Positions 9,506 through 56,983 are shown, numbered from the stretch's first letter. The stretch is 64,000 nucleotides of DNA from Scyliorhinus canicula (GCF_902713615.1 NC_052162.1:130534653-130598652); one strand, 5' to 3'. Notes: generated by a model from the letters alone, not told the origin. A program made the numbers and translations.

Positions 9506-10393
9506 TCAATCCTGGATGTGATTAACAGACGCAATATCTGCAGACTCCGACCCCTTGTGAACTCGCTGGTGTCTCAAAAGGTTGGACAATCGAGTGAATC
9601 CTTTCCCACAGGTAGAGCAGGTGAACGGTCTCTCCCCAGTGTGAAGTCGCTGATGTGTCAGCAGGTTGGATGACTGAGTGAATCCCTTGCCACACACAGA
9701 GCAGGTGAACGGCCTTTCTCCAGTGTGAACTCGCTGATGTGCCAGCAGAGTGAACGAATCACTGAATCCCTTGCCACAAGCAGAGCACGTAAACGACCTC
9801 TCCCCGGTGTGAACTTGCCGGTGTCGCAACAGGTTGGTTGAGTGACTGAATCCCTTCCCACAAACAGAACAGGTGAACCGCCTCTCACCAGTGTGAACTT
9901 GCTGGTGAGTCACTAGATTGGATGACTGAGTGAATCCCTTTCCACATACACAGCAGATAAACGGTCTCTCCAAAGTATGAACTCGCTGGTGTGAATGCAG
10001 GTTCGATGACTGTGCAAAACCTTTCCCACACATAGAGCAGATGAATGGTTTCTTCCCGCTGTGAACTCTCTCATGTGTCAGCAGGGTGGAAGAATCACTG
10101 AATCTTTTCCCACACTCCAAGCAGATGAACGGTTTCTCTCCGGTGTGAACTCGCTGGTGAATCAGCAGGTGGGATAACTGAGTGAATCCTTTCGCACACT
10201 CAGAGCAGGTGAACGGTCTCTCACCAGTGTGAACACGTTGGTGTGTTTGCAGGTTCGCTAACCGTATGAATCCCTTCCCGCAGTTAGGGCAGGTGAACGG
10301 CCTCTCCCCAGTGTGACTGCGTCGATGCGTTTCCAGCACAGATGGACAACGGAATCCCTTCCCGCAGTCACCACATTTCCACGGTTTCTCCAT
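9506..10393 (-). CDS. C2H2 zinc-finger protein ZNF-A, 10 fingers, 295 aa
   Basis: Starts [14 protein letters not shown] in ACCATGG context. Ten CxxC-x12-HxxxH fingers with TGERP-type linkers; tail SVNHIQD; shared splice acceptor at ~10760. Confidence 0.92.
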
Positions 10394-11519
10394 GGTGCGA
10401 GAATCCTTCTGTCTCTCCAGGTCTGAGGATCAAATGTAACTGTCCACACACAGAATTTGTGTATGGTTTCTCCCCAGTGTGAATGGTGTAATGTTTCATC
10501 AAAATGTGTAGCTGGTTAAAGTTCTTTCTGCAGACAGGGGAAAACTTGAAAATTCTCATTGAAATGTGTTTGTATTGGTGTTTTTCCAGTCACGCTGATG
10601 TCTAAAACCTCAGAATCAGACAGAACAGACAAACATTTCCTCTTCTCGATTCAAAGAATGATGATGTTCAGGTCTCGAGGAATTGGAATCATCCTGTCAG
10701 ATCTTAATGTGACTTTTGGTTTGATATTTCTGTCGGCAAATTCTCCCCTTCTAATATCCTGTGAAAGGAGTTTACAAAGGTCAAACATCTCAATTTAGGA
10801 ATAGAAATTTAAACCTGACAAATCTTCTATCTATGCGTATTGCACTGCACTGTTTTACTTGCTCATTTGTACTTGGGCGATGTGTGGATGATGATTGATT
10901 GGGCAGCAAGCATGTCCTGGAACTTGCGGCCTACGAGGCTGGTGGAAGCAGAAAGGATCAATGGTTTCAAACTGAACTTGGATGGACACTCGAAGGAAAT
11001 TAATTTGCTGGCGAAGAGGGATTATAGAGGGGAATAGGACTGACTGGATTACTCCACAGAGAATTGGCATGGACTGAAGTTGCGGAATGGATGGCTTCTG
11101 TGCTGCAATGACCTTTGGAAATATATAACAAAGCTACAGCACTATATTACAAGACCAGAAATATTAACACATGTAATTCATTGGAAAACCATAAATATGT
11201 GCAAAATAACAATCCAACAACATATCTATGCATTTTATTAATTTACTGTTCCTTTAAATATCAGTCATCTCCTGGGGAAACCATCCCTTTAATTGTGACC
11301 ATCAGGAAATAGATCATTCTTTTAGCCAGTCAAATAAATGTGTCAAGCTGAGTGAGCAAAGAGAGAGTGAGAGAGACCAACCTTTCCAGAATCTGCAGCC
11401 TCCCTGGATTCACTTCCTTTCCTTTTCCTTCCTGCAAGTCACCAATTTCCCCCAGAAATAGAAAAGAAATGGAAATGATTTTCTCCCACATGCTGCTCAG
11501 AGGAAGTTTCAATCTAAAG

Positions 11520-12016
11520 CTCATTGACTGACTTCCGCCTTGTGGCGTCACAATGGAGCCCCGCTCTGCATCAGCCAATAGGAATCACTCTGCTCCACGA
11601 TGACGTCTTCTGGTTTCAGTGCGCAGGCCCGGCGCGCGTACACGGGAACCCCGCCCCCGCCATTGTTCCTCGCCCCCTCCTCGAGACAACGTTTCCAGGT
11701 AACCGACTGCCGGCTCCGGCAAGAGTGAGAAGCCGCTCGGTGAACTCCCCCTCCCCCTCTCTCTACGGCGGCTGGCTGGTCCGAAAAGAGATCGGGAGCG
11801 ACAGCCGCACTGCGCCTGCTCCGGACACCTCGGTTCAGCAGCGCTCTCTGCGCCTGCGCGCTAGGCTGCCAGCTGAGGGAGTGGGGGAGGGGACTTTGCA
11901 AAATGTCTTCCCATCATTTTCCTCCCAGTCCTGCAGTCTGACTTTAAACAGCATAGCATCTGTTTATAGTTTCACACACAGACTGAAACTTCCTCCTCTG
12001 TCCAACATCTGTGAGT
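11520..12016. promoter_or_regulatory. CpG-rich putative bidirectional promoter P1 and first-exon donor
   Basis: Local CpG enrichment, CCAAT (~11575), TGACGTC (11601), NRF1-like TGCGCCTGCGC (~11849), donor GTGAGT at 12011. Lies between divergent ZNF-A and ZNF-B. Confidence 0.7.
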
Positions 12017-12116
12017 AAAACACTTTCTTTCTCCCCCTGGGAACTACAGAAAGTTGTGGGACTCTGGAACTGGAATTAAAGATTTTGTAGAACCTGTTTT
12101 TATTGTCTGAGATATT

Positions 12117-13206
12117 TGGAAAAAAATAATTTTAGACTACCCAATTATTTTTTCCCCCAATTAAGGGCAATTGGCATGGCGTACTCTGCACATCTTTGCG
12201 TTGTGGGGGTGAGACCCACGCAGACATGGGGAGAATGTGCAAACTCCACACGGACAGTGACCCTGAGCCAGGATCGAACCCAGGTCCTCGGCGTCTGGGG
12301 GCAGCAGTGCTAACCACTGCGCCACCGTGCTGCTCTATTGTGCGAGATATGTAAAGACAAATTTATCCTGTCTATTCAAATACTGCGTTAATATGTGATT
12401 CATTTATGTTTTTAATTTGATTGTTACTGTAAACGTTTTTAAAATGTGAAACATTTTGTTCCTGTGAGATTGTCTGAGAATTTGTTGATTCCGAGATTGT
12501 AACAACATAAATGTGTCTGATTATATATCTTGCCTATTGTATACATTATTTCTGTTTCAGTGATAATGTTCATTTATTATGATTTCTAGTCTAAGTACTG
12601 CAGTACATTACATGTTTCCAGTCATTACAGTACAGGAGTCCATTCACCAACTTGAGTCCACACCATCTCTTTGTAGAGCAATCAAGTCAGTTATTCCCCC
12701 ATTTCCCCGTAACTTTATTTCTTTCAAATGTCCATTCAGTTTCATTTTGAAATCATTATTATCTCTGCTTCCTCAATCCTCATAGGCAGAAAGGTCCAGG
12801 ACATGACCACTCACTGCCTAAATAAAGCACTTCCTCATAGTCCTAATGTACCTCTCATCAAGTAATGCAGTGCTGTATAATTTGCAGAGTTTTGATCCAC
12901 TAAGCATATATACTTTGAAATTATTCATCATCTCCACTTCCATTAGCCACATAGTAAGTAATTTTTAAAAAATAGGTTTAGAGTACCCAATTATTTTCTT
13001 TTCCAATTAAGGGGCAATTTAGCCTGGCCAGTCCACCTAACCTGCACATCTTTGGGTTGTGGAAGCGAAACCCACGCAAACACGGGGAGAACGTGCAAAC
13101 TTCACAGAATGTGCAAACTCCCCACGGACAGTGACCCAGGGCCGGGATTCAAACCCGGGTCCTCAGCGCCGTAGGCAGCAATGCTAACCACTGGGCCCTG
13201 TGCCGC
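12117..13206 (-). mobile_element. Two short A-tailed V-SINEs (12117-12333, 12962-13206) in the ZNF-B intron
   Basis: V-SINE core with imperfect flanking repeats TATTGTnnGAGATAT and ACATAGTnAGT. Confidence 0.8.
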
Positions 13207-13817
13207 CTACATAGTTAGTGAATTGACACATGCCGTTGTGCCATGGCAGGAAGCAGTGAGCATGGATTTGTTGATCAGTGCGAAGCAGCACCTTTTGCAA
13301 CTTGGGAGGATGCAGATTAGGTAAAGCAGAGTGAGAATAGAGGAATCATATGTGCAACGGCGATTTACAGCTTTTGGGGAATGAGAGAGCAAAGATATGC
13401 CAGAGAAAATGGAATTGTTTGTTCTGAATGTATATCCTGTCCTGACAATGATGACTTTGTAAACTGTTTTCACAGAATACTAGAAGGGGAGGATTTCCAT
13501 ACAGGAATCTCAAGCCAAATAGCACGTCAAGATCTGGGAGAGTCACTCGAACCATTGGGTCCTGAATATCATCAGCCTTTGATTCTGGAAAGAGAAATGT
13601 TTGTCTGTTCAATAAGTTTTAAGCATCAATGCGGCTGAAAAAGCTCTGAGACACACACACATGCGAGTGAGAGCGTTCCAGTGCAACAATTGTTGTAACA
13701 AAGTGCACAGCCAGAAAATATATTGCACCATTCACAGTCAAGAGAGACTATACACGTTTTGTATGTGTGGACGGGTTTTCAACTTCCAAACTGGGGAGAT
13801 ACAAGGACACCCGCATC

Positions 13818-14639
13818 ATGGAGAAACCGTGGAAATGTGAGGACTGTGGGAAGGGATTCCGTACCCCTTCTGCACTGGAAACTCACCGACGCACTCACAC
13901 CGGGGAGAGGCCATTCATCTGCTCCGTGTGTGGGAAGGGATTCACTCACTCATCCCATCTGTTTACACATCAGCGAGTTCACACCGGGGAGCGACCATTC
14001 ACTTGCTCTGAGTGTGGGAAGGGATTCTCTCACTCGTCCCACCTGCAGACGCACCAGCGAGTTCACACTGGGGAGAGGCCGTTCATCTGCTCCGAGTGTG
14101 GGAAGGGATTCAGCGAGTCGTCCACCCTGCAGAACCATCGCGTAGTTCACACTGGAGAGAGGCCATTCACCTGCCCTGTGTGTGAGAAGGGATTCACTCG
14201 GATAACCAACATGCTGCGACACCAGCAAGTTCACACCGGGGAGAGGCCATTCAACTGCTCGGTGTGCAAAAAGGAATTCACTCGATCAACCAGTCTGCTG
14301 ACGCACCGACGTGTTCACACTGGAGAGAGGCCGTTCAGCTGCAATGAGTGTGGAAAGGGATTCCCTAATTCATCCAACCTGTGGAAGCACCGGCGAGTTC
14401 ACACCGGGGAGAAACCGTTCACCTGCTCTCTGTGTGGGAAAGGATTCAGCGAATCGTCCCACCTGCTGAGACACCAACGGGTTCACACCGGGGAGAGGCC
14501 TTTCACCTGCTCCGAGTGTGGGAAGGTATTCGCTGATTCATCCAGCCTGCGGAGGCACCAGCGAGTTCATACTGAGGAGAGAGGCTGTTCGCCTATTCCG
14601 AGTGTGGGTACAGATTCATGGAATCGTCCAAGCTGCTGA
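13818..14639 (+). CDS. C2H2 zinc-finger protein ZNF-B, 9 intact fingers plus a frameshifted tenth
   Basis: ATG 13818 gives MEKPWKCEDC. Acceptor TTTTCACAG at ~13475. The final ERGCSPIPSV... is an out-of-frame degenerate finger. Confidence 0.9.
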   Translation: MEKPWKCEDCGKGFRTPSALETHRRTHTGERPFICSVCGKGFTHSSHLFTHQRVHTGERPFTCSECGKGFSHSSHLQTHQRVHTGERPFICSECGKGFSESSTLQNHRVVHTGERPFTCPVCEKGFTRITNMLRHQQVHTGERPFNCSVCKKEFTRSTSLLTHRRVHTGERPFSCNECGKGFPNSSNLWKHRRVHTGEKPFTCSLCGKGFSESSHLLRHQRVHTGERPFTCSECGKVFADSSSLRRHQRVHTEERGCSPIPSVGTDSWNRPSC

Positions 14640-14685
14640 GACACAGTCACACCAATTGGAGCCCTTTAGATGCTCTGACTGTGGG

Positions 14686-15330: not shown

Positions 15331-15911
15331 AGCAGATCCGGATATCACAACAAAGGACAGGATTGGAACAGAATCGGTGAATAAACCCGAGGAATGACGG
15401 CGGGGAAACAATTGACTCATGTTTCTGGTCTGATTCAAAATATCATCGTGTGATAGAAAATCAAGAACTTCACAGTGAGACAGAGAATTCGGAGGCTGAC
15501 AATGATGATAATCACACTGAAGGAATTGTGCGAGTCGCAAAGTTACGATCCTGGTTGGGACGGTTAACGTTTAAAGAGAAATTTGAACACCCTGTGATTA
15601 ACTGAGAGAATTATGCCATGATGTTTCATTTTTTTAAACGAAAATAAGCTTTACTATACATGTAAAATAAACTAAAATTTAAAAACCAGCATTAAGAACT
15701 GAATATATTGTCAATAAAGACTATGAACGTCATTCCACTTTTTAACCTCACCTCAAGATGTCCCTGATACTAATGATATCTTGAAGGTTCCTCACTTCTG
15801 TTCCTGGGACCACGTCAAAACTGAACTCCTCAGTCCGTGTGGGCTTCGCTGCATCCTTGCTGTGGGATTTAAACATGAAGAACATTCCTAGTTCCTACTA
15901 CACCTTCTAGT

Positions 15912-16675
15912 CCCACAGTTGGTTCACAGATCCTGCTCCCACAGCTGGTTCCCAGCTCCTGCTCCCACAGCTGGTTCCCAGCTCCTGCTCCCACAGCCGG
16001 TTCACAGCTCCTGCTCCCACAGCCGGTTCCCAGCTCCTGCTCCCACAGCTGGTTCACAGCTCCTGCTCCCACAGCTGGTTCCCAGCTCCTGCTCCCACAG
16101 CCGGTTCACAGCTCCTGCTCCCACAGCCGGTTCACAGCTCCTGCTCCCACAGCTGGTTCACAGCTCCTGCTCCCACAGCTGGTTCCCAGCTCCTGCTCCC
16201 ACAGCCGGTTCACAGCTCCTGCTCCCACAGCTGGTTTCCAGCTCCTGCTCCCACAGCTGGTTCGCAGTTCCTGCTCCCACAGCCGGTTCACAGCTCCTGC
16301 TCCCACAGCCGGTTCCCAGCTCCAGCTCCCGCAGCTGGTTCACAGCTCCAGCTCCCACAGCTGGTTCCCAGCTCCTGCTCCCACAGCCGGTTCCCAGCTC
16401 CAGCTCCCACAGCTGGTTCCCAGCTCCAGCTCCCACAGCTGGTTCACAATGATCCTGCTCCCACAAGCTGGTTCCCAGCTCCTGCTCCCACAGCCGGTTC
16501 ACAGCTCCTGCTCCCACAGCTGGTTCACAGCTCCTGCTCCCACAGCTGGTTCACAGCTCCTGCTCCCACAGCCGGTTCACAGCTCCTGCTCCCACAGCTG
16601 GTTCCCAGCTCCTGCTCCCACAGCTGGTTCACAGCTCCTGCTCCCACAGCTGGTTCACAGCTCCTGCTCCCACAG
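15912..16675. repeat. Minisatellite, 26-bp unit CAGCTCCTGCTCCCACAGCYGGTTCM, about 29 copies
   Basis: Direct tandem repeat; 26-aa (3-unit) periodicity in the spurious ORFs. Confidence 0.95.
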
Positions 16676-17285
16676 ATGACTGCTTCCAAGCTAAGTGCAG
16701 CCTGCCTGCGTTCTGTGAGAAACACCCAGAATTCCAACCAAGGCTCCAGCCTGAATCCCCATGGTAACAGATCAGTTTGCATATCCAACATTATGTAAAT
16801 TAACTTCCAGGTTCAGAACCAAACCATTTTTGAGGTCTGCATGAAGAATTCACCGCTCTAACAAAGACAGGACAATAATTGTCAGACCCACTGCCTCCAG
16901 ATCTCCAGCTAAAAGAGCCCAAGCTGCCATTTTACAGTCCTTACCCATCAAGTTTTGACTTAAGTCAACATGGACTTTTGAGGGTGTTTTTGTCAGATTC
17001 TCAACCCAGGTTTTCCATTGATCTTACATGTAAAGAAAATCCTAAACTAATTCATATTTGTAAAACAAATGTCACTGGATTTGGTTGTCATGCCCCCTTA
17101 GCAACATATATGAATTATGAAACTAGATCTTTGCAACATCATCCCAAGGAAGAAATGAAAATCTATTAACCTTGCAATATAAATTTAGAATATTACAACT
17201 TGCAACATGCTGTCAATGTCTTTAAGGGAGACCTGGGCCAACCTTTCCAGAGTCTGCATCCTCCCTGGATTCACTTCCTTTCCCT

Positions 17286-19509: not shown

Positions 19510-20179
19510 CATTTTCAGAGCCATACTTCGAGCCCAATGGAGGATCCCAATTTCTCCATGACAGATAGGCTCTGGAACCCCTTCAAGCCCTACGACCTTC
19601 CAAGCTCCCTTTACTCCTCCAGCTCTGAGCCTCACCCTTCACCCACATCAATCCCCCACTGTGTGCCGCAATTTCAACTGCCAGGGTCTCGATCTGTGAA
19701 ATTCTCTCCTCCTTTAAGATCATTCTAAAAATGTACTTCTTCGACCTAGCTTTAGATATCTGTAATCATTTTGAGACTGTTTACGATGTTATAGGTTCGA
19801 TATAATTGCAAGTTGTTGTTATTATTTTGCATTGGTAAGACTCAGGAATGTCACACAAACATTCTAAGTCCTGGTACAAAAATTATCTCCAGTTATTTCC
19901 AGACTGGAAACTGTGTGTCTCTCAGTTTCACTCTCAGTCAGGACCAAATCCCAGTTTTACACCAATCTCTGATCTGACAGCACATTTCCAGCATTCACCA
20001 TGGTTCTTCCTGACTCTAAACACAGTTGTAAAGGAGCTTCAGTTTCACGTCTCGGAGCTCTGAGCCATGGAAGAACGTGGCTAGGACAGATTTTTAACAC
20101 AAGATTATTCAAGATTAAACCACACATTCAGTCCTGGGTGTGCATAACAGCATCAATAACAGCAGATTCTAACCCTTAG

Positions 20180-20683
20180 TCATTTGTGAGCCTGCTGGTG
20201 TTTCAGCAGGTTAGATGGCTGAGTGAATCCCTTCCCACACAGAGAGCAGCTGAACATCACCTCAGTGTGAATTCGCCGGTGTGTCAGCAGGTTACCGAAC
20301 CTACTGAATCCCTTCCCACACACAGAACAAGTGAATGGTCTATCCCCGGTGTGAACTCGCTGGTGTGACAGCAGGTTAATTGACTGAGTGAATCCTTTCC
20401 CACACACAGAGCAGGTAAAAGGTCTCTCTCCGGTATGAGTGCGTTCGTGTATCTGCAGGTGCTGTGACCGAGTGAATCCCTTCCCGCACTCGGAACAGGT
20501 GAACGGTGTCTCCCTTTTGTGAGTACGTTGATGTCTCTGCAAGTGCCAAGAATCGGTGAATCCCTTGCCACACTCGGAACAGGCGAACGGCCTCTCCCCG
20601 GTGTGACTGCGGCGGTGAACCTCCAGCTCAGACGGGGATCTGAATCCCTTCCCACAGTCCCCACATTTCCATGGTTTCTCCAT
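20180..20683 (-). CDS. C2H2 zinc-finger protein ZNF-C, 6 fingers, 167 aa
   Basis: [10 protein letters not shown] start in ACCATGG; six fingers; ends HK-TGA; shared acceptor at ~21050. Confidence 0.88.
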   Translation of the reverse strand: MEKPWKCGDCGKGFRSPSELEVHRRSHTGERPFACSECGKGFTDSWHLQRHQRTHKRETPFTCSECGKGFTRSQHLQIHERTHTGERPFTCSVCGKGFTQSINLLSHQRVHTGDRPFTCSVCGKGFSRFGNLLTHRRIHTEVMFSCSLCGKGFTQPSNLLKHQQAHK

Positions 20684-21648
20684 GGTGCCAGCGACTTTGT
20701 GTCTCTCCAGGCTGGACGATTTGTTGAACTTTCATCCACACGCAGAGCATGTGACCAGAATTTCTCTCCTCTGTGAATGGTGTAATTTTTTTTCAGGCTC
20801 TGTAACTGGATAAAGCTCTTTGCAGAGTCAATTCACTGGAACACCCTCACTCGGGTTTGTGTGTTTCTGCGCTTTTCCAGCCGCCACTGATGTTTGAAAT
20901 TGTTTCCCACTGATAGACAGCTGCACGTTTCTCCTTCTACATTCAAAGGCTGCTAATATTTAGATCCTCATGGATTGAGTGACTCGGTCAGATCATGTCA
21001 CGGTGTTCGATTTGAGTTTCCTGTCAGGAAATCCTCCCCTTCTATTATCCTGTAAAAGGAGTTTACTTAAGTCATTACTCAGTATAGTACAGAAATTGCA
21101 AACACACTGTACTAATTCCTGTGGATTTCCACCCCCCCCCCCCCCCCCCCCCCCCCAAGTTGTAAATCCCACACCACACCTCTCCTTACTCCCTGGGCTG
21201 AAATTCAAACCCATCTGCAATTTTACTTTCCTCCCTTCCCAGTTTTTTCACTCTTTCTACTCTGGGTGGGTTCCGTTATCCAGCCCCTCTGCACAGAGAC
21301 AATAAAAATCAACAAATTAATCATTTTCTCCCCTGGTCATGGGGACCCTATTGGTGACAGTCCCCCAAATGATCAGATTCCTCCAGGTCAATTTCAGAAC
21401 CGTTTTGTTGTAGATCCTATCACAATCCCTCTTCCTGTTTTCAACACGGCTCTAATTCAGGTCCCGAGTCCTGCACCAGGTGTTGGTGAAACCTCCCAGA
21501 ATCACAAGACTTGTTCAGGCACAGAAGGCGGCCATTTGGCCTGTCGTGTCTGCGTCTGCTCTTCAAATGAGCATCATGACTTAGTGCCATCCATCTGACT
21601 TTTCCCCATGTACCCCTGCACATTGTTTCTATTCAAGTAATTTTATGA

Positions 21649-21985
21649 GTGGCATGGTCGCACAGTGATTAGCATCATTGCTTCACAGTTCCAGGGTCCC
21701 AGGTTCGATTCCCGGCTTGGGTCACTGTCTGTGCGGAGTCTGCACGTTCTCCCCGTGTCTGCGTGGGTTTCCTCCGGGTGCTCCGGTTTCCTCCCACAGT
21801 CCAAAGCTGTGCAGGTTAGGTGGATTGGCTATGCTAAACAAAATTGATTTTGGTGTCCAAAAAAGGTTAGGTGGGGTTACTGGGAACTGGTGGAGGTGTG
21901 GGATTAAGTAGGGTTCTCTTTCCAAGGGCCAGTGCAGACTCAATGGGCCGATTGGCCTCTTTCTGCACGATAAAGTCTATGACTC
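21649..21985 (+). mobile_element. HE1/V-SINE-type SINE
   Basis: Head, core and CR1-like tail. Confidence 0.85.
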
Positions 21986-22199
21986 TATGATAATCATCGA
22001 ATACCCTCTTGAATGCCTCAATTGAAGCTGCATCCACCACCCTTCCAGGCAGTGCATTCCAGACCCCCAACCAACTCGTTGTCCTCTCCAGCACTCGACC
22101 CTTTTGCACCCGCTGCGGGTTTCTGATCAGTGAATTGACCTGAATGATTTCCTGGGTTTCTCTCCACAGCCACTTTCGAATCTGCTGGGGCTTCCCACC

Positions 22200-22870
22200 A
22201 GACCACCTGCCTTCTTCCGGCTTCAGCTCTGCGCATGCTTCAATCACAGCGGACACCGCCCCTCATTCACTCAGATTGCTTGGAGGACCAGCCGCCCCCG
22301 CTCGGTCCTCCAGCCCTGCCCCTCTTCCTATTGGTCCAGACAGCCGTCAATCACCAGTGTAGTGAGCTGGAGCATGCTCAGTGCAGAAGGTATGTCTCGT
22401 CGGAGCTCGCTGTGCTGAGAAACAGGTGTGTGTGTGTGGTGTGGGGGGGGGGCGGGGCGGTAGACGAGCCTGCGGGATGGGTTCAGAGGCTTCATAGCCA
22501 GATGTCAGAGCTTGGCCGCCAGTAATAATTCCCCCCCCCCCCCCCCCAAATGTTGAACCAGATGCACCTGGTCAGGTTTGGTCAAATGAACTCGGCGAGC
22601 GGCCGCCATCTTTCTGGTGAAAGGCCTGACATGCGTAGCGGCCTGACGTATGCGTAGCCAATGAGGGCGATCTGGGCTCAAGAGTCCCGCCCGTCATTCA
22701 CACGGATTGGGCGGAGGACCAGTCACTCCAGTTCGGTCATCCAGCTCCGCCTCTTCTTTCCATTGGTCTTCAGTTGCCGTCAATCACCAGGGCATTGTGA
22801 GGTCACAGCCGATTCAGGAACAGCCGCTGAGACAACTGGGCTTCCTCTTGTATGGATTGGATTTGTTGAT
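22200..22870. promoter_or_regulatory. CpG-rich putative bidirectional promoter P2
   Basis: NRF1-like TGCGCATGC (22230), CCAAT boxes, YY1 GCCGCCATCTT (22602), two copies of the GGAGGACC..GGTCCTCC module. Lies between ZNF-C and ZNF-D. Confidence 0.7.
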
Positions 22871-22960
22871 TGTCACCTGTGGGGAGGGGCAGTGAAAAGT
22901 ATCGAGCAGCTCAAACAGATGATTTAGTACATGAAAATAAAAAGAAAATATATAATGGAA

Positions 22961-23790
22961 TCATAGAATAGAATTTACAATGCAGCAGGAGGCCATTCGG
23001 CCCATCAAGTCTGCACCGGCCCTTATAAAGAGCACCCTACTGAAGCCCACGTATCTACCATATTCCAGTAACCCCCACTTAACATTTTTTGGACACTAAG
23101 GGCAATTTCTCATGGCCAATCCACCTAACCCGCATATCTCTGGAATGTGGGAGGAAACCAGAGCACCCGGAGGAAACCCACGCTGACACGGGGAGAACGT
23201 TCAGACTCCGCATAGACAGTGACCCAGCCGGGGTCTCTGGAGCTGTGAAGCAACTATGCTAACCACTGTGCTACCGTGCTTCCCCGGGGAAACACAAGGT
23301 ACATACTGTAAATACATAGACATCAGCATCGGGTGAAGCGTAAAGGGGCGTGGTATTAATCAGGTCAGTCCATAAGAGGGTCACTTAGGAGTCTGGTAAC
23401 AGCAGGGAAGAAGCTATTTTTGAATCTGTTTGTGCGTGTTCTCAGACATTTGTATCTCCTGCCCAATGGAAGAAGTTGGAAGAGTGAGTAAGCCGGGTGG
23501 GAGGGGTCTTTGATTATGCTGCCCGCTTTCCCCAGGCAGCGGGCGGTGTAGATGGAGGCAATGGATGAGAGGCAGGTTTGTGTGATGGACTGGGCTGTGT
23601 TCATGACTCTGTAGTTTCTTACAGTCTTGGGCCGGGCAGTTGCCATACCAGGCTGTGGTGCAGCTAGATAGGATGCTTTCTATGGTGCATATGTAAAAGT
23701 TGGTAAGAGTTAATGTGGACATGCCAAATTTCCTTAGTTTCCTGTGCTTTCTTGGTGGCAGCGTCAACGTGGGTGGATCAGGACAGGTTT
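22961..23790 (-). mobile_element. V-SINE (22961-23285) abutting a Rex1/Babar LINE 3' fragment (23290-23790)
   Basis: Translation FYICTIESILSSCTTAWYGNC, homologous to 35263-35853. Confidence 0.8.
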
Positions 23791-24660: not shown

Positions 24661-25227
24661 AGGTAAGCTATTGTTATCTCCAGTGAAAATTTGTTAAAAA
24701 GATAAGGAAAAAATAATCTACGCTTACTTTATTTGGATTTCAGCCCAGGGAGGAGGGAGAGTGTGTGGGATGGGGATTTACAGCTTTGGGGGAACAAGAG
24801 AGGGAAAAATGTTCCAGAGAAACTAGAATTGTCTGTTCAGAATTTCTATCCTGGACTGACAGTGATGACTTTTGTAAACTCCTTTTACAGGATATTGGAA
24901 GAAAGGAGTTACAGACAGAAAACTCAGACCAAACGTCAGATCAAGGTCTGCGCGAGTCACTCATTTAATCAGGACCTGAATATTATCCTCTTTGATTGGA
25001 AGGATGGATGTTTGTTCTGTCTATGGGGAAAGATTTCAAACATCAATGTGACTGGAAAAGCACCGAGACACACACACCGAGTGAGAGTGAACTGATTGTG
25101 GGAAGAGCTGTCACCAGTTACACAGCCTGAAAAAATATTGCACCATTCACCAACGGAGAGAAACTGTTACATGTGTTCCTTGTGTGGATGAGGCTTCAAC
25201 CTGGAGAGATACAAGGACACCAATACC

Positions 25228-25734
25228 ACGGAGAAACCGTGGAAATGTGAGGTCTGTGGGAAGGGATTCAATTATCCATCCCGGCTGGAATACCATCTAC
25301 GTAGTCACACTGGGGAGAAACCGTTCAGCTGCTCTGAGTGTGGGAAGGGATTCATTCATTCATCCCATCTTTTGAGACACCAGCATGTTCACACCAAGGA
25401 GAAACCGTTCACTTGCTCCATTTGTGGAAAGGGATTTAATCAGTCAGCCAACCTCCTGACCCACCACCGAGTTCACACCAGGGAGAGGCCGTTCATCTGC
25501 TCGGTGTGTGGGAAGGGATTCACTCAGGCAGCCAGCCTCATGTTACACGAGCGCATTCACACTGAGGAGAAGCCGTTCAGCTGCACTTACTGTGGAAAGA
25601 GATTCAAGCTTTCAGGCAACCTTATTGTACACCAGCGCATTCACACTGGGGAGAAGCTGTTCACCTGCTCCGTGTGTGATAAGGGATTCACTCGCTCGTC
25701 CATTCTGCTGAGACACAAGGAAAGTCACAAGTGA
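25228..25734 (+). pseudogene. C2H2 zinc-finger gene ZNF-D, 6 fingers, family start codon changed ATG to ACG
   Basis: ACC-ACG-GAG-AAA-CCG-TGG at 25225. Frame is open to TGA 25734, with an in-frame TGA at 25189 upstream. Acceptor CTTTTACAG at 24890. Confidence 0.7.
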
Positions 25735-27290: not shown

Positions 27291-27296
27291 AAGATA

Positions 27297-42830: not shown

Positions 42831-43514
42831 GAAAATGGGAGAGTGGTACAGTGGTTAGCACTGCTGCCTTACATGTCTGGATTCTTTCGGCAGCACACTA
42901 TTCGCTGGCGGCGGGATTCTATACTCCCACAGCTTGTCAATGGGATTTCCCATTGAAGCCGCCCCACGCAGCCAGCAAACCCGCAGGTGGGAGGGATACA
43001 CTGCCGGCGGAAAAATTGAACCGCAATGGCCAGAGAATTCCGGCCCATGTCTCTGTTTATATTTCATAGGGATCTATCTTAGCTATTGTTACATTAGACT
43101 CTGCAATGGGTTATATTACACAAGATCATTTCTGTGAAAAACTGCATTAGACCACATCTCAGTTTTAACTTTACAATAGACCCTTACTCACTAATGCGAC
43201 ACTAAATCATGTTCCCAACTGTAAGTAGGTCTGGGTGGCTAGACTTTAATTTAACTGGCCCATTTTTATGTTGTATCCAGCAATAACTAACAAGGTCAAG
43301 GAAACCATAAGGATCTCAACCCAAAACTAAAGAGGTCATTTTATTTTCTGCATTAAGCACATGTATTAATCAAATTACTCTATCAAGGGAGTAACCAGCC
43401 ATGAAACAGATGATTGTACAAATAATGAGCCTTGATTAAGTTATAAATAATGAATCAGTAATCATATTTGAAAGATTGCGGTTTCATTCAAAATTTGTTA
43501 CGTTCAATTATTAT

Positions 43515-44253
43515 GGGCGCGATTCTCCGCACTCCCGACGGTGCGGAGAATAGCGTGGCTCGTAAAATTTTACGGCCACGCTGTTCCGACGCCCTCCCGT
43601 TATTCTCCCCCCCCCCCCCACGCCCAACTCCCGATACGAATCGCTGCCGCCGTTTTTTTACGGCCGGCAGCGATTCTCAGCTGATGGATGGGCCGAGTTC
43701 CCAGCCCTTTACGGCTGTTTTTACGAATGGCAAACACACCTGGTCTGGCCGTTCGTAAAAACGGCCGTAAACTGTCGATTTTTAAAACCATGGCACCGAT
43801 TGGCACGGCAGTACCACGGCCGTGCCAAGGGTGCCATGGGCCCGCGATCGGTGGGCACCGATCACGGGCAGCGGGCCCGATGCCCGTGCACTCTTTGTCC
43901 TTCCGCCGCCCCGCAGTATCCATTCGCGGGGCGGCTGAGGGGCATCCCGGCCCGCGCATGCGCGGGTTTCGCGCAAATGCGCGATGACGTCATCCGCGCA
44001 TGCGCGGGTTGGAGTCTTCCAATCCGCGCATGCGCGGCTGACGTCATATGACGCGTCAGCCGGCGCTAACTCTGGCAAGCGGGCTTAACGAAATTCGTTA
44101 AGCCTGCGATGCCGGAGTTTACGGCGTCGGGATGCTAGCCCCGACCGGGGACCAGAATCAGTTCCCGGTCGGGAAGGGGGGGGGGCTGGCGTCAAACCCG
44201 CCCGGATTTGACGCCAGCCTTACGATTTCTCCCCATATGGGAGAATCGCGCCC
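43515..44253. mobile_element. GC-rich MITE, second copy (inverted relative to 28273-28920)
   Basis: TIR GGGCGCGATTCTCC at both ends; AT on both flanks. Confidence 0.85.
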
Positions 44254-44507
44254 ATGTCTCAGGGTTTGCGTGTGAAGTTGCAATTTCAGACAAATTCTGA
44301 AATCCTATTAATGAAGGATCCCTGATAAAGATCCTGAGGAAATGCACACCATGATCCTTTTGTTTGGCCCAGTGGATAGAGAAATAGTTTAAAACCAAGA
44401 AATTTGAACTCCATTATATTTCCGTCTGATGCACGGAGGCCAGGTACTTGTGACAAAGGACTGGTCAGATTAACCCTAGCAGCAGCTAGAGGCAAGAGGT
44501 TCAAAAG

Positions 44508-51797: not shown

Positions 51798-52946
51798 TCA
51801 GTCCTCGATGTGATTAACAGTAACAATAACAGAAGAATCCAACCCTTGCTGTCGCATGTGAACTTGCTGGTGTCTGAGCAGGTTGTTGGACTGAGCGAAT
51901 CCCTTCCCACAGGCAAAGCAGTTGAACGGCCTCTCCCCAGTGTGAACCCGCTGGTGTGCCAACAGCTTCTGTTTACTTTTAAATCTCTTCTCGCAGTCAG
52001 AACATTGAAAAGGTTTATGATCAGTGTGAACAAGTTGGTGTGTGGTCAGGTGGGATGACTGGGTAAATCTGTTGCCACACACGGAGCAAACGTACGGTCT
52101 CTCCCCAGTGTGAACTCGCTGGTGTATCAGAAGGTCAGATGAATCAATGAATTCCTGCCAACACACAGAGCAGGTGAACGGCCTCTCCCCAGTGTGAACC
52201 CGATGGTGTCTCAGAAGGTGGGCTAACCGAGTGAATCCCTTTCCACAGAGAGGGCAGGTGAACGGCCTCTCCCCTGTGTGAATGTGTTTGTGTTTCAGAA
52301 GATCCTTTTTGCTTTTAAATTTTTTCTCACACTGAGAACAATCAAAAGGCCTCTGATCCGTGTGAACAAATTGGTGTGCCAAAAGGTGAGATGAACAAGT
52401 GAACCCCTTCGAACACATGGAGCAGGTGAATGGCCTCTCCCCAGTGTGAGTACGTTCATGGTTCAGTAGATCCTTTTTACTTTTAAAGGTCTTCTCACAG
52501 TCAGAACATTTAAAAGGTCTCTGATCAGTGTGAACAAGTTGGTGTGTCAGGAGGTGGGAGGACTGAGTGAATCCCTTTCCACACACTTTGCATATGAATG
52601 GTCTCTCTCCAGTGTGAGTGCGTTGGTGTATCAGTAGATCTTTTCTGCTTTTGAAGCTCTTCTCACAGTCAGAACAATTAAATGGTCTCTGATCAGAGTG
52701 GACCTGATGATGAGTCCGGAGTGTTGATAAAGCATTAAATCCCATCCCACACTCAAGACAAGTAAACGGCCTCTCACCAGTATGAACATGCTGGTGTGTG
52801 TAGAGACTGGATGACTGAGTGAATCCCTTCCCACACACGGAGCAGGTGAACGGCCTCTCCCCAGTGTGAGTGCGTCGATGAGTTTCCAATTCAGATGGGT
52901 AACTGAATCCCTTCCCACAGTCCCCGCATTTCCATGGTTTTGCCAT
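51798..52946 (-). CDS. C2H2 zinc-finger protein ZNF-E, 13 fingers, 382 aa
   Basis: [10 protein letters not shown] start; 13 fingers with TGERP and TDQRP linkers; tail GLDSSVIVTVNHIED. Confidence 0.93.
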   Translation of the reverse strand: MAKPWKCGDCGKGFSYPSELETHRRTHTGERPFTCSVCGKGFTQSSSLYTHQHVHTGERPFTCLECGMGFNALSTLRTHHQVHSDQRPFNCSDCEKSFKSRKDLLIHQRTHTGERPFICKVCGKGFTQSSHLLTHQLVHTDQRPFKCSDCEKTFKSKKDLLNHERTHTGERPFTCSMCSKGFTCSSHLLAHQFVHTDQRPFDCSQCEKKFKSKKDLLKHKHIHTGERPFTCPLCGKGFTRLAHLLRHHRVHTGERPFTCSVCWQEFIDSSDLLIHQRVHTGERPYVCSVCGNRFTQSSHLTTHQLVHTDHKPFQCSDCEKRFKSKQKLLAHQRVHTGERPFNCFACGKGFAQSNNLLRHQQVHMRQQGLDSSVIVTVNHIED

Positions 52947-53444
52947 GATGCTGGTATCCTTGTGTCCCTCCAGATTGGATGATCAATTGAAGCCTCGTCC
53001 ACACACAGAACACAAGTATGATGTATCCCTGATGGAAATGGAGCAATATCTTTTCAGGCTGTCTGACTGGTTGAGCCTTGTTCCAGTTAACCGACTGTGA
53101 AAAGTCAGGATGTCTGTGTTTCAATTCTTTCCCAGTCTCACTGATGTTTGAAATCTTTTCTCACAGATGGAACAGACGAACATTTCTCCTTCCACTTTCA
53201 AAGACCAATGATATTCAGGTCCTGATGAATCATGTGACTCAATCAGATCTTGGTGTGATGTCTCATTTCAGTCTGTAAATCCCGTCTTGTTTCCTGCAAA
53301 AGTTTAGAAAAATCATCAGTAAGTCCAAAGTAGAAACTCTGAACAGACAATTCTAGTTTCTCTGGAACATTTCTTCCTGTGGTTCCCCCAAAGCTGTAAA
53401 TCCCCTTCCCCCACACTCCCTCCTCCCTGGGCTGAAATCCAAAC

Positions 53445-53789
53445 TAGAATTTACAGTGCAGAAGGAGGACATTCGGCCCATCAAGTCTACACCTGCTCTT
53501 GGAAAGAGCACCCTACCCAAGGTCCACACCTCCACCCTATCCGCACAACCCAGTAACACCACCCAATACTAAGGGCAATTTTGGACACTAAGGGCAATTT
53601 ATCATGGCCAATCCACCTAACCTGCACATCATTGGACTGTGGGAGGAAACCGGAGCACACTGAGGAAACCCACGCAGACACGGGGAGAACGTGCAGACCC
53701 CGCACAGACAGTGACCCAAGCCGGGAATCGAACCTGGGACCCTAGAGCTGTGAAGCAATTGTGCGAATCACAATGCTACCGTGCTGCCC
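53445..53789 (-). mobile_element. HE1/V-SINE-type SINE in the ZNF-E intron
   Basis: Same subfamily as 5871 and 45039 (duplicated ATTGCCCTTAG). Confidence 0.85.
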
Positions 53790-54199
53790 TCCACTCCCAG
53801 TTTTCTCCCTCCCTCTCATCTGCCTGGGTTCAGTTCTCCAGCTCCTGTCTGCAGACTGACAATAAAATTAATGGGTCTTATTGGGGGTTTGGGCTTTGAC
53901 AAGGAAACCTCCCAGGGTTTCCTTTTTTGCCAGAAATCAGAGTCCTCATTGATTTGGGTGCAAAGTGTCAGCTCTTATTTATTATCCCCCCTCCCCCATC
54001 CTGTGATGTGAACCACCCTCCAGTGTGTGAAGCAGGATGGTGCCCGTTAACCTGGGCCTGTTCCTGGAAGGGAGGGAGAAGCTAGCAGCTGCAAACCAGG
54101 GAGCTGACAATGATGGTGAAGGGTTTGCGGACCCACAAAATGTTTCCAAATCCTCCCACCCACCGCCTGACGCTGACTCCGCTTCTCCGGGACAAACAA

Positions 54200-54950
54200 G
54201 GGCCCAGGTCACCAATGACATTGCGCATGCGCCACACGCTTTGACACCACGCACGCGCACGGAAATCCATGTCCAGCTGCTGCACTGCGCATGCTCCGCA
54301 TCACAGCGCCCGGGGAGTGACTGACGGAAGCTCCCGGCCAATAGGAAGGGGAGGCGGGACTGGAGGACCGAGCGGGAGCGTCTGCTCCTCCAACCAATCG
54401 GGCGGGGGTTGAGCTCGATCTCCCTCATTGGCTAAACGCAGTAAGACGTCTTGCACCAGGAAACCCAAGGAACAACTGGGCAGACAGGGAATATCACCAT
54501 TAGAACAAACAGTGTCCCTAGTTCCAACAACGAATAAGTGATGATAAATTAATGGCGACTCCCAATGGCGGGGATTTCACCCAGGGTTCCCCGCGGCGCA
54601 GAATGTCCCCATCCGCCAAACAGGGCATCTCTGCACATGCGCGGTTCAGCGGTGCGCTTCGGGCATGCGCGGTGTGAGTGCTCGTTTGTTTGTCGCTAAG
54701 GGACCGGGAAGAGGAGCCGGAGGAAGGGAACCGGCGGCTGGGCGGAGGCGGTTCAGCAAACACCGGTATCGGCCGCAAACACCGGAAAACATTTGAAACT
54801 CCCGCATTTGCAGCTCCGGAACCTTTTCCCGGCAACAGGCCCAGGTTAACGGCCGCCATCTTCTTCCAGCGGAGAGAAGAGCGCTTCGGCGGCCATGTTG
54901 GTGAGAGTGGGCGGGGCTTCAGGGTCCCAGTGACCAGGAGAGAAAAAAAA
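54200..54950. promoter_or_regulatory. CpG-rich putative bidirectional promoter P3
   Basis: NRF1 TGCGCATGCGC (54222) plus variants (~54286, 54633, 54662), CCAAT boxes, GC boxes, YY1 GCCGCCATCTT (54852). Lies between ZNF-E and ZNF-F. Confidence 0.78.
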
Positions 54951-55990
54951 TGATTGCCTCAGTTGTCACTCTGCACACGGGTGCGAGAGTACTGAATCAA
55001 GCCAGAGTCGAGGGTGAGGAAAAAAACTGGGAGTGGAGGAAATAGGTGGGGGAGATTGTGCCGTGGGGTTGGATTTCCTCACGGATATGTGGATGGATTT
55101 CATCAAAAAGATGTGGATGAGGGCAGCACAGTGGCGGAGGTGGTAGCACTGCTGCCTCAGAAATCCCAGCCCTGGGTCACTATGTGTGGCCCAAAGATGT
55201 GCAGGGTAGGTGGATTGGCCACGCTGAATTGCCCCTTCATTTAAAAAAAAAATGAATTGGGTACTTTAAAGTTTAGGAAAAAACAGATGTGGGTGGTGAA
55301 TGTGTGGTGCGAGCCTTGACAGCTACAGGGGATTTTTCCAATTAAGAGGAAATTTAGCGTTACTAATCCACCTACCCTGCATATCTTTGGGTCAAGGGGG
55401 TGAGACCCACGCAAACATGGAGACAATGTGCAAACTCCATACAGAAAGTGACCCGGAGCAAGGATCGAACCCGGTTCCTCGGTGCCGTGAGTCAGCAGTG
55501 CTAACCAGTGCGCCAACGTGCCGTTCCCGAGAGGAAGACATTTCCATAGAAACTAGAATTGTCCAATCTGAATGTCTATCCTGCACTTTTAATGCTAACT
55601 TTTGTAAATTCCCTTCACAGGGTCTAAGAAGAGAAGGTTTGCTCAAACCAAAATCAAGTCAAGATCTGGCAGCGTTGCTCAATTTTTCAGCGCCCGATTA
55701 TCATCAGCCTTTGAATGGAGGAGGAAAAATGTTTGCCTGCTCCATTTCCAAGGAAGGATTTCTAACTTCAGTGTGACTGCAACTTTGTATGATTTTATTC
55801 TATTATAAAAGCACTGCCACACACATTGGAGTGCCAGTGTTCCAGTACACTGACTGTGGAAAAAGCTTTAATCAGTTACACATCCTGGAAAAAGTGCACC
55901 ATTCACAGTGAAGAAAAACTGTACATTTGTTTTGTGTGGAGACGAGGGTTTAACTGATCTAAGTTGGCGAGACACAAGGACACCAGCACA

Positions 55991-56983
55991 ATGGAGAAAC
56001 CATGGAAATGTGGGGACTGTGGTAAAGGATTCAGTTATCCATCCCAGCTGGAAATACATCAGCGCAGTCACATTCGGGCCAGCACTGTGGAAAAACCTTG
56101 GAAATGTGAGGACTGTGGTAAAGGATTCTATTACCCATCCCTGTTGGAAATCCACCGACGCAGTCACACTGGAGAGAAGCCATTCACCTGCTCTGTGTGT
56201 GGGAAGGGATTTACTCAGTCAACCTGCCTCATGTCACACCAGAAAATTCACACTGAGGAGAGGCCGTTCAGGTGCATTTCCTGTGGAAAGCGGTTCAGGC
56301 AGTCATCCCATCTGACTGCACACCAGCAAACCCACTCTGAAGACAAGCCATTCAGCTGCACTTCCTGTGGAAAGGGATTCCGGCAGTCATCCAGCCTCAT
56401 TGAGCACCAGCGAGTCCACACTGGAGAGAGGCCATTCACCTGCTCTGTGTGTGGGAAAGGATTTGCTTGGTCATCCGGCCTTAGGTCACACCAGCAAGCT
56501 CACATTGAGGAGAAGCCATTCAGCTGCACTTCCTGTGGAAAGAGATTCACGCGTTCATCCAGCCTCATTGAGCACCAGCGAGTTCACTCTGGGGAGAGGC
56601 CATTCACCTGCTCTGTGTGCGGGAAGGGATTCACTGGGTCATCCAGCTTCCAGAAGCACCAGCGAATTCACACAGAGGAGAAGCCATTCAGCTGCACTTT
56701 TTGTGGCAAGGGGTTCAGGCAGACTTCTGACCTCAATGTACACCAGCGAGTTCACACTGGAGAGAGACCATTCACCTGCTCCGTGTGCGGGAAGAGATTC
56801 ACAAAGTCTTTCACACTGCTGACACACCAACGCACCCACACTGGAGAGAGACCGTTCACCTGTTCTGGATGTGGGAAGGGATTCACTCAGTCATCTAACC
56901 TCATGGCCCATCAGCGGGTGCATAAGTGTCTGCAGCGGTTAGATTCTGTTGTTATTGCTGCTGGTAATCACACCCAGGATTGA
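55991..56983 (+). CDS. C2H2 zinc-finger protein ZNF-F, 11 fingers
   Basis: ATG 55991 gives [10 protein letters not shown]; first finger duplicated; tail RLDSVVIAAGNHTQD; acceptor CTTCACAG at 55620. Confidence 0.93.
   Translation: MEKPWKCGDCGKGFSYPSQLEIHQRSHIRASTVEKPWKCEDCGKGFYYPSLLEIHRRSHTGEKPFTCSVCGKGFTQSTCLMSHQKIHTEERPFRCISCGKRFRQSSHLTAHQQTHSEDKPFSCTSCGKGFRQSSSLIEHQRVHTGERPFTCSVCGKGFAWSSGLRSHQQAHIEEKPFSCTSCGKRFTRSSSLIEHQRVHSGERPFTCSVCGKGFTGSSSFQKHQRIHTEEKPFSCTFCGKGFRQTSDLNVHQRVHTGERPFTCSVCGKRFTKSFTLLTHQRTHTGERPFTCSGCGKGFTQSSNLMAHQRVHKCLQRLDSVVIAAGNHTQD

What the first reader, a model, noticed from the sequence alone, without database searches (positions are those of the whole stretch)
9506..56983. 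Six zinc-finger genes built as three head-to-head pairs on bidirectional CpG promoters
Seen: strand order -,+ / -,+ / -,+ (A/B, C/D, E/F). Each pair brackets a non-repeat CpG-rich island with NRF1, CCAAT and YY1/CRE motifs. All six share the M(E/A)KPWKC start position and a homologous intron end/acceptor, and none shows a KRAB, SCAN or BTB exon. Established: NRF1/NF-Y/YY1 typify bidirectional promoters, and tandem ZNF families expand alongside transposons. Inference: the unit of duplication may be a divergent two-gene cassette of a KRAB-less chondrichthyan ZNF family, possibly a TE-surveillance system.
Basis: partly seen in the sequence, partly recalled or inferred. Interest (0 to 1): 0.7.

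Follow-up and report, generated by a model that had tools for sequence, protein, structure and literature searches.

The report
Mirror-paired fingers-only shark zinc-finger genes
Six catshark zinc-finger genes that encode only DNA-binding fingers sit as three back-to-back pairs around related promoter islands; this is a lineage-specific variant of a familiar fast-duplicating gene family, and the scan has met it in several other windows of this genome.

Summary
The layout is real. Six C2H2 finger arrays lie at the stated places in the order -,+ / -,+ / -,+. All six share a conserved splice acceptor 337-370 nt upstream of the shared start position.

- Only five genes have the ATG. D has ACG and no usable start.
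- NRF1 and YY1 motifs are clear in the E/F island, partial in C/D and absent from A/B.
- The C/D "island" is no richer in CpG than the finger exons.

New here:
- The stretch between acceptor and ATG is the wreck of a leader plus about three fingers, with stops in all frames. No upstream coding exon can feed the array through this acceptor.
- The ATG sits at the glycine position of a TGEKP-type linker.
- A spliced transcript contig joins an exon in the E/F island (54753-54900) to F's finger exon. Stranded reads run the other way, towards E, from about 54200. Two-way firing is therefore supported for E/F only.
- The three islands share one exact 10-mer CCAAT box, found nowhere else in the window.
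- Each pair is an inverted duplication.

A simple left=left, right=right cassette phylogeny is rejected; the gene tree is star-like. The transposon-surveillance idea is untested. Earlier agents of this scan reported the same layout on other DNA of this genome.

The parts
9506..10393 (-). Gene A coding region: 295 aa, 10 fingers, C-terminal tail ...VNHIQD
   Evidence: The public annotation starts a 617-aa model at this ATG, and that model runs leftwards out of the window.
10394..10758 (-). Gene A: 5' untranslated part of the finger exon, a decayed leader plus about 3 fingers. The acceptor AG is at 10759-10760.
   Evidence: Stops in all three frames; alignment A1.
13476..13817 (+). Gene B: decayed leader/finger region, which serves as 5'UTR
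   Evidence: Homologous to the coding leader of S. torazame P0150 (E 0.001).
13818..14639 (+). Gene B coding region: 273 aa, 9 fingers. The tail is a frame-shifted finger.
   Evidence: This exact product is annotated in GCA_902713615.2.
20180..21049 (-). Gene C: finger exon. ATG at 20683, 167 aa, 6 fingers, and a premature stop before the tail.
   Evidence: The 167-aa product is not on record, and no gene was listed at C's place.
24891..25734 (+). Gene D: finger exon. ACG stands in place of the ATG at 25228. It has 6 fingers and a TGA before an in-frame tail. Probably a pseudogene.
51798..52946 (-). Gene E coding region: 382 aa, 13 fingers, with a two-finger module repeated
   Evidence: This exact product is annotated. 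It is 65% identical to Heptranchias P0025.
52947..53293 (-). Gene E: decayed leader/finger region (5'UTR). The acceptor is used in RNA-like contigs.
   Evidence: The X1 and X5 contigs end at 53292-53297 and carry 24-29 further letters.
54753..54900 (+). Gene F exon 1: non-coding, inside the CpG island, with donor G|GTGAGA
   Evidence: X5 contig 11 joins 54753-54899 to 55620-55877. X1 contig 5 covers 54334-54901. F-strand raw reads lie at 54800-54999.
55621..56983 (+). Gene F finger exon. The decayed leader ends at 55990; the CDS is 55991-56983 (330 aa, 11 fingers, signature finger duplicated).
   Evidence: There are four upstream ATGs with short ORFs.
54188..54752 (.). E/F promoter core: NRF1 sites at 54223, 54287, 54636 and 54664; CCAAT boxes at 54338, 54392 and 54425; the perfect palindrome AAGACGTCTT at 54443-54452, close to the mirror midpoint
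   Evidence: Raw RNA depth is about zero from 54200 to 54799, between the E-strand and F-strand reads.
53788..54187 (-). Presumed exon 1 region of E. It mirrors F's exon 1 and intron start (54029-54187 ~ 54866-54711; 53788-53862 ~ 55039-54963).
   Evidence: E-strand reads at 30-70x in X21, but with fixed differences from the window, so close paralogues may supply them. Mirror alignments. The donor was not mapped.
11441..11980 (.). A/B CpG island, with CCAATAGGAA at 11575 and ATGACGTCTT at 11600
   Evidence: RNA-like contig runs from 8 studies hold 0.17-0.33 of its words. No splice was mapped.
10831..11208 (.). A-side arm of the A/B mirror block. Its partner is 12535-12889 (67% identity over 384 nt).
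22254..22845 (.). C/D promoter region. It holds two direct copies of the core shared with E/F (22254-22389 and 22655-22845), an exact YY1 site at 22602 followed by a possible donor, and CCAATAGGAA at 22325 (-).

Best explanation
These are six members of a shark-and-ray family of fingers-only C2H2 zinc-finger genes.

Gene structure. Each gene has a short non-coding first exon in a CpG-rich promoter and one large exon. The first 337-370 nt of the large exon are the wreck of an older coding region: a leader of about 45 residues plus about three fingers. This stretch now serves as 5'UTR. Translation starts at an ATG that sits where the glycine of a TGEKP-type linker would be. It is followed at once by a signature finger (KPWKC-G/E-D-CGKGF-xx-PS-x-LE-x-H-x-R-S/T-H). 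An ACG-to-ATG change at a CpG is a plausible origin of this start codon.

Pairing. The genes lie in mirror-image pairs made by inverted duplication that took the promoter along. Two promoter halves therefore stand back to back around a shared NF-Y (CCAAT)/CRE-like core, with NRF1 and YY1 sites in two of the three islands.

Expression. In E/F the island is transcribed both ways from points about 150-550 bp apart.

Status of the copies. A, B, E and F are kept by selection as finger arrays. C and D look like copies on the way out.

Inferred, not shown. The proteins are sequence-specific DNA binders with fast-changing contact residues. How they act without an effector domain is unknown; the invariant first finger or the short C-terminal tail are the candidates.
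For: - Arrays and frames.
- Acceptor and decayed region, with stops in all frames in all six genes.
- The decayed region is homologous to leaders that are read in frame in S. torazame proteins: F against P0191, E 1e-4 over 50 aa, and B against P0150, E 0.001.
- Both ATG and ACG/Thr versions exist in other sharks: MEKPWKC in Pristiophorus and Mustelus, TTEKPWKC in Heterodontus and Heptranchias.
- Annotation starts A, B, E and F at this ATG.
- The F exon 1 splice, contigs ending at E's and F's acceptors, and opposite-strand reads on either side of a silent 54200-54799.
- Selection on the arrays: there are no stops in 1,615 codons of array, against several stops and frameshifts per ~120 codons in the adjacent wreck. 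Variation is concentrated at helix positions.
- Mirror blocks.
- Shared promoter elements.
- Only C2H2 domains; no KRAB or SCAN.
Against: - E's first exon and donor were not mapped. The E-strand reads at 53800-54199 differ from the window at about 8 fixed sites, and high-depth contigs map there, so near-identical paralogues may supply most of them.
- A/B and C/D have no splice evidence, only a word share for the A/B island.
- F's mRNA carries four upstream ATGs, so translation of the main frame is not assured.
- The ACG-to-ATG direction is inferred, not polarised by a rooted tree.
- No binding or repression data exist.
Confidence: 0.7

Rival explanations
1. One reading: one ancestral divergent two-gene cassette (left gene, promoter, right gene) was copied as a unit. 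The left genes would then be orthologous to each other, and so would the right genes.
For: All three islands share the exact 10-mer CCAAT box, and C/D and E/F share a core of about 150 bp. Promoters and genes were therefore copied together at some stage. Earlier agents report unit-wise copies elsewhere in this genome. One flipped bipartition, {A,C,F | B,D,E}, is not rejected (p-AU 0.27).
Against: The left|right split is rejected (p-AU 0.015), and so is {A,D,E | B,C,F} (p-AU 0.015). The tree is star-like and no bootstrap tree has either group as a clade. A/B and E/F each carry pair-specific mirror blocks that are absent from the other pairs.
Confidence: 0.35
2. These are not truly shared promoters. 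Each pair has two independent one-way promoters that merely stand back to back, because an inverted duplication copied a one-way promoter.
For: NRF1 sites lie on both flanks of the E/F core (54223/54287 and 54636/64). Exon-1 sequences are mirrored. The read-supported limit of E-directed RNA and the start of the spliced F contig are about 550 bp apart, with no raw RNA reads between.
Against: The central CCAAT/CRE-like module (54261-54452) is single, not mirrored. One contig reaches 54334 in the F direction. Under the usual operational definition (divergent starts less than 1 kb apart) the distinction is one of degree.
Confidence: 0.35
3. The cluster is a graveyard. All six are transcribed pseudogenes that lost their N-terminal coding part, and the open arrays are a residue.
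For: The leader and three fingers are wrecked in all six genes. D lacks a start and C's product is not on record in the annotation. C and D have premature stops before the tail. The 5'UTR carries upstream ATGs. Earlier agents found about half of the copies dead elsewhere.
Against: The copies are only 64-76% identical in the aligned intron end, wrecked region and first finger, yet 55 of 55 fingers keep their zinc ligands and no array has a stop. The ATG and a good Kozak context are kept in most copies. E has a 65%-identical counterpart in Heptranchias. The same M start is predicted in Pristiophorus and Mustelus.
Confidence: 0.15
4. An effector-domain exon exists further upstream, or is used in other tissues, and was missed.
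For: S. torazame models P0150 and P0191 have N-terminal extensions read through the homologous leader.
Against: Stops in all frames behind the acceptor in all six genes. F's exon 1 joins directly to that acceptor. P0150's N-terminal 232 residues have no relative in the protein collection searched and no Pfam hit. tblastn finds no copy in the window.
Confidence: 0.05

Closest known systems
KRAB zinc-finger gene clusters of tetrapods (KZFPs)
   Same: Tandem clusters in repeat-rich DNA. The whole finger array sits in one large last exon. Contact residues (-1, 2, 3, 6) are hypervariable on a rigid TGEKP-linked scaffold. Finger modules are duplicated internally, and many copies are dead.
   Different: No KRAB or any other effector domain. 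The coding region starts inside the array. The genes are arranged as mirror-image head-to-head pairs. No TRIM28-type pathway can be inferred.
FiNZ zinc-finger genes of cyprinid fish (Wells et al. 2023, PMC10547256)
   Same: A lineage-specific, highly expanded fish ZNF family outside the KRAB system, proposed to track transposons.
   Different: FiNZ genes are defined by a conserved N-terminal domain. Here the N-terminal region is decayed, and the family marker is the first finger itself. The main text of that paper does not mention sharks or cartilaginous fish.
Vertebrate bidirectional CpG-island promoters (divergent gene pairs less than 1 kb apart; NRF1, NF-Y, YY1 and GABPA sites enriched) - from general knowledge of that literature
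   Same: Head-to-head genes, a CpG island, and NF-Y/NRF1/YY1 motifs in E/F. Opposite-strand RNA lies on the two sides of a silent core of about 550 bp.
   Different: Typical pairs are unrelated housekeeping genes. Here the partners are paralogues and the promoter is itself a partial palindrome left by an inverted duplication. A/B lacks NRF1 and YY1 sites.
Annotated shark ZNF models with the same signature finger: Pristiophorus P0031, Mustelus P0143, Heterodontus P0194, Heptranchias P0025, S. torazame P0150/P0191, Rhinoraja P0059
   Same: The [20 protein letters not shown] first finger. The M start is at the same place in two of them.
   Different: Several models read further upstream (Thr in place of Met) into leaders or unrelated sequence. 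None of these N-terminal parts has a known domain.

Membership tests
C2H2 (Krueppel-type) zinc-finger proteins | Tandem C-x2-C-x12-H-x3-H fingers joined by TGEKP-like linkers | tested here: met
   55 fingers in six arrays. Pfam zf-C2H2 and zf-H2C2_2 match all six with E-values from 1e-36 to 1e-80.
KRAB-ZNF (KZFP) | N-terminal KRAB domain (PF01352) encoded by upstream exons | tested here: not met
   No Pfam KRAB hit. No recurrent tblastn hit with 116 N-termini. Stops in all frames behind the acceptor. F's exon 1 is non-coding and joins that acceptor.
SCAN-ZNF / BTB-ZNF | SCAN or BTB domain in the same transcript as the fingers | tested here: not met
   No such Pfam hit in the six products or in the island ORFs. 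The only BTB domain in the window belongs to a separate intronless BTBD17-like gene at 36472-37779.
FiNZ ZNF | Conserved N-terminal FiNZ domain | not tested
The products have no N-terminal non-finger region at all.
Bidirectional promoter | Two divergent transcription starts less than 1 kb apart | tested here: inconclusive
   E/F: F's exon 1 is shown by a spliced contig, starting at or before 54753 (one contig reaches 54334). E-strand reads end near 54200, but they may come partly from close paralogues. A/B has only a word share in RNA-like runs. C/D was not tested.
Bidirectional promoter | CpG island with NRF1 / NF-Y / YY1-type motifs | tested here: met
   Met for E/F, partly for C/D and weakly for A/B.
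Shark/ray fingers-only ZNF family (as named by earlier agents of this scan) | Signature first finger KPWKC..CGKGF..PS.LE.H.R(S/T)H straight after the start | tested here: met
   Invariant W, K, P-S and L-E in all six first fingers. The same finger is found in five other sharks and a skate.

The most novel reading that the evidence does not exclude
Cartilaginous fishes carry a large, undescribed ZNF family that shed its N-terminal region and gained a new start codon inside a finger linker. It multiplies as palindromic gene pairs on a conserved NF-Y/CRE-like (with NRF1 and YY1 sites in two of three islands) two-way promoter. It represses transposons without any canonical effector domain, using the invariant first finger or the short C-terminal tail to recruit partners.
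Probability: 0.15. Interest if true: 0.65.

Novelty: new variant of a known kind. Interest (0 to 1): 0.4.

Why it matters
If fingers-only ZNFs in sharks and rays do police transposons, they would be a KRAB-independent answer to the same problem in the oldest jawed-vertebrate lineage. Their effector would have to be something small, either one finger or a tail of about 15 residues.

The pair structure is also a clean natural case of a bidirectional promoter being born from an inverted duplication of a one-way promoter.

As it stands, this window adds three things to what the scan already reported on this family:
- transcript evidence for one pair;
- the origin of the start codon;
- a negative result for the simple cassette phylogeny.

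It is not a new kind of system.

Tried and rejected
- Whole-protein homologue search with E was swamped by generic ZNFs and gave only two useful shark hits.
- Exact-product look-ups for transcript contigs found only the genome annotation. A's 295-aa and C's 167-aa products are not on record. No DNA was returned because the sample file is too large.
- Pfam on the longest island ORFs and on the leader found nothing.
- P0150's long acidic N-terminus looked like a possible family effector. It has no relative in the protein collection searched, no Pfam match, and only insignificant tblastn hits at 8.0-8.5 kb. I rejected it as a conserved domain.
- A resemblance between the peptide encoded antisense to F's exon 1 (MAAVNLGL...) and the start of Heterodontus P0194 (MAAINPGL...) is not significant (E 4.8). 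It probably reflects only the shared YY1 motif.
- A skate leader (P0059) did not align to B's leader.
- Literature searches found no description of this family or of paired ZNF promoters in sharks.
- The first two attempts at the second run search failed because the server was busy.


Full report
WHAT IS THERE

A six-frame scan finds 55 canonical C2H2 fingers, all inside six open frames:
- A 9506-10393 (-)
- B 13818-14639 (+)
- C 20180-20683 (-)
- D 25228-25734 (+)
- E 51798-52946 (-)
- F 55991-56983 (+)

The order is -,+ / -,+ / -,+. The gaps between the start positions of partners are 3.4, 4.5 and 3.0 kb. Pfam sees nothing but C2H2-type families in the six products. An exact-product look-up places the window in assembly GCA_902713615.2; earlier agents call the species the small-spotted catshark. 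The annotation holds B (273 aa), E (382 aa) and F (330 aa) exactly as read from the shared ATG. A's ATG is the start of a 617-aa model that runs out of the window. C's 167-aa product is not on record, and no gene was listed at C's place.

GENE STRUCTURE

Homology between the six genes does not stop at the ATG. It runs on for 337-370 nt to a conserved acceptor (TTTYRCAG|G) and a further ~150 nt into the intron.

Translated, the stretch between acceptor and ATG is the wreck of a coding region. It reads as a leader (consensus about ...DL.ESL..SGPEYHQPLNVEGE) followed by three fingers. All of this is broken by stops and frameshifts, and every one of the six genes has stops in all three frames. No upstream coding exon can therefore be read into the array through this acceptor. 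That is a stronger argument for "no KRAB/SCAN/BTB" than a failed search, although the search also failed: tblastn with 116 non-finger N-termini gave a best E of 0.002 for one query, with scattered places.

The wreck is homologous to leaders that are read in frame in gene models of the sister species S. torazame. F matches P0191 at 40% over 50 residues (E 1e-4). B matches P0150 at E 0.001. P0150's long N-terminal part has no relative in the protein collection searched and no domain, so it is not a family effector.

The ATG stands where the glycine of a TGEKP linker would be (H-K-D-T-x-T-M-E-K-P-W-K-C). D has ACG (Thr) there, as do the Heterodontus and Heptranchias models. Pristiophorus and Mustelus models start at MEKPWKC. 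ACG to ATG is a CpG transition, so a start codon born inside the linker is a plausible origin. The direction of change is inferred, not shown.

D has no ATG and a closed frame 12 codons upstream. C and D both have stops cutting off the C-terminal tail. These two are probably dying.

The other four arrays are clearly maintained. The copies are only 64-76% identical in the aligned block of intron end, wrecked region and first finger. Yet none of 1,615 array codons is a stop and every finger keeps its ligands. Variation is concentrated at helix positions.

The first finger is a family signature: W-K-C, P-S and L-E are invariant. It recurs at 79-89% identity in five other shark species and recognisably in a skate.

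TRANSCRIPTS (E/F ONLY; ONE CALL ALLOWED)

In one search, contig sets X1 and X5 behave as RNA, because their contigs begin or end at the predicted acceptors.
- X5 contig 11 joins 54753-54899 to 55620-55877. F therefore has a non-coding exon 1 inside the CpG island, with donor G|GTGAGA at 54900/54901, spliced to the conserved acceptor.
- X1 contig 5 covers 54334-54901.
- For E, contigs stop at 53292-53297 with 24-29 further letters. The acceptor is used, but the upstream exon was not shown.

The raw stranded runs read E's exon on one strand and F's on the other. On the E strand they cover 53800-54199 (30-70x in X21). They give about nothing from 54200 to 54799. On the F strand they give a depth of about 2 at 54800-54999.

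This is the pattern of divergent transcription from points 150-550 bp apart. One caveat applies. The E-side reads differ from the window at about eight fixed sites, and high-depth contigs map there, so near-identical paralogues elsewhere may supply most of them.

F's mRNA has four upstream ATGs. The first lies in exon 1 and opens the old leader frame for 53 codons.

For A/B, only indirect support exists: RNA-like contig runs from eight studies hold 0.17-0.33 of the island's sampled words. C/D was not tested.

PROMOTERS

Against a window CpG o/e of 0.48:
- E/F: 54061-55080, o/e 0.78, a real island.
- A/B: 11441-11980, o/e 0.79, a real island.
- C/D: 22461-22880, o/e 0.63, no richer than the finger exons.

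Motifs by island:
- NRF1 (CATGCGC): five in E/F, one in C/D, none in A/B. All other NRF1 sites in the window lie in two unrelated islands.
- Exact YY1 sites occur only at 22602 and 54852.
- A/B has a CCAAT box and a CRE-like ATGACGTCTT.

The islands are nevertheless related. The exact 10-mer CCAATAGGAA occurs three times in the window, at 11575, 22325 and 54338, that is once per island. I estimate about 0.1 exact matches by chance from sequence length alone; the tool's shuffle control covers only the one-mismatch count. C/D holds two direct copies of a ~150-bp core that E/F holds once, in the opposite orientation.

MIRROR STRUCTURE

Each pair is a partial palindrome.
- E/F: 54029-54187 mirrors 54866-54711 (F's exon 1), and 53788-53862 mirrors 55039-54963. 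The intron ends mirror each other as well.
- The midpoint of the exon-1 mirror blocks (about 54449) falls on a perfect palindrome, AAGACGTCTT, at 54443-54452.
- A/B: 10831-11208 mirrors 12889-12535, a block found in no other pair.

The pairs were therefore made by inverted duplication that included the promoter. SINE insertions have since broken the symmetry.

WAS THE PAIR THE UNIT OF COPYING?

A maximum-likelihood tree of intron end, wrecked region and first finger is star-like. AU tests give:
- left | right: rejected (p 0.015);
- {A,D,E | B,C,F}: rejected (p 0.015);
- {A,C,F | B,D,E}: not rejected (p 0.27);
- partners as sisters: A+B p 0.18, C+D p 0.36, E+F p 0.07.

The shared promoter elements say that genes and promoters travelled together at some stage.

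CONTEXT AND VERDICT

Earlier agents of this scan reported the same layout in at least seven other windows of this genome. They judged the family old, shared by sharks and rays, apparently undescribed, and about half dead. They noted that two-way promoter use had not been shown. I found no paper describing the family. The main metazoan ZNF survey does not mention cartilaginous fish in its main text.

My verdict is that this is a real, lineage-specific variant of the familiar fast-evolving ZNF cluster. This window adds transcript support for one divergent promoter, the decayed N-terminal region and linker-born start codon, and a negative test of the simple cassette phylogeny. The transposon-surveillance function remains conjecture.

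Noticed in passing
window 36472-37779 (+): Intronless 435-aa ORF with BTB, BACK and BTBD17-type TRAF domains (Pfam E 5e-18, 4e-22, 3e-9). It sits in the 26-kb gap between pairs C/D and E/F and is unrelated to the ZNF genes.
   Followed up: partly
window 28161-29160 and 43461-44360: The two strongest CpG islands of the window (o/e 1.04 and 1.24, about 90 CpG each). They are inverted copies of each other (28427-28851 ~ 44047-43593 at 74%; also 27367-27647 ~ 45003-44724). They hold four of the five full NRF1 sites and three of the four full CRE sites in the window. They lie to either side of the BTBD17-like gene, have no Pfam hit, and are not homologous to the ZNF promoter core.
   Followed up: partly
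window 9506-9556, 51798-51857, 56924-56983; remnants at 20127-20182 and 25735-25781: A conserved C-terminal tail (..LDS.VI..VNH.QD-stop) ends A, E and F. In D it lies in frame behind a TGA, and in C it is frame-shifted behind a stop. It is a possible short effector motif and was also noted by another first-reader finding.
   Followed up: partly
window 14571-14639: B ends in a frame-shifted finger (..CSPIPSVGTDS..C-stop). Similar endings close S. torazame P0191 and Heptranchias P0025, so this second tail type may be old.
   Followed up: no
window 55991-56170: F carries a tandem duplication of the start-plus-signature-finger unit ([10 protein letters not shown]... then VEKPWKCEDC...).
   Followed up: no
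window 52000-52700: E is built from a repeated two-finger module (CEK.FKSKKDLL.H alternating with [15 protein letters not shown]). The same alternation is seen in Heptranchias P0025 (65% identity), so this subtype predates the split of those shark orders.
   Followed up: no
window 53800-54199: RNA reads and high-depth contigs map here with about 8 fixed differences from the window. At least one near-identical (95% or more) expressed copy of this promoter-proximal segment probably exists elsewhere, although the ZNF genes inside the window are only about 70% alike.
   Followed up: no
window 3658-4004, 7605-7950, 41495-41844, 53445-53789 and more than 20 other places: A SINE-like repeat of about 330 bp (70-98% identity between copies). 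Copies lie inside the first introns of several of the ZNF genes, and at 21652-21991 / 22960-23279 as an inverted pair around the C/D island.
   Followed up: no
window 15900-16692: An array of about 800 bp of tandem repeats (copies 90-96% alike, offsets in multiples of about 26 bp) in the tail-to-tail gap between B and C.
   Followed up: no
window 9506-10393 and leftwards: The public annotation starts a 617-aa product at A's ATG, and the model runs left beyond window position 3818. No finger motif lies between 1 and 9500, so the model must splice to a distant array. It may be a merged read-through model.
   Followed up: partly
window 28026-28430, 32680-33201, 35263-35853: LINE fragments in the D-E gap: a GDFN-type endonuclease-like ORF, an RVT_1 fragment (E 1e-5) and an ORF with an ALKBH8_N-type hit.
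   Followed up: no
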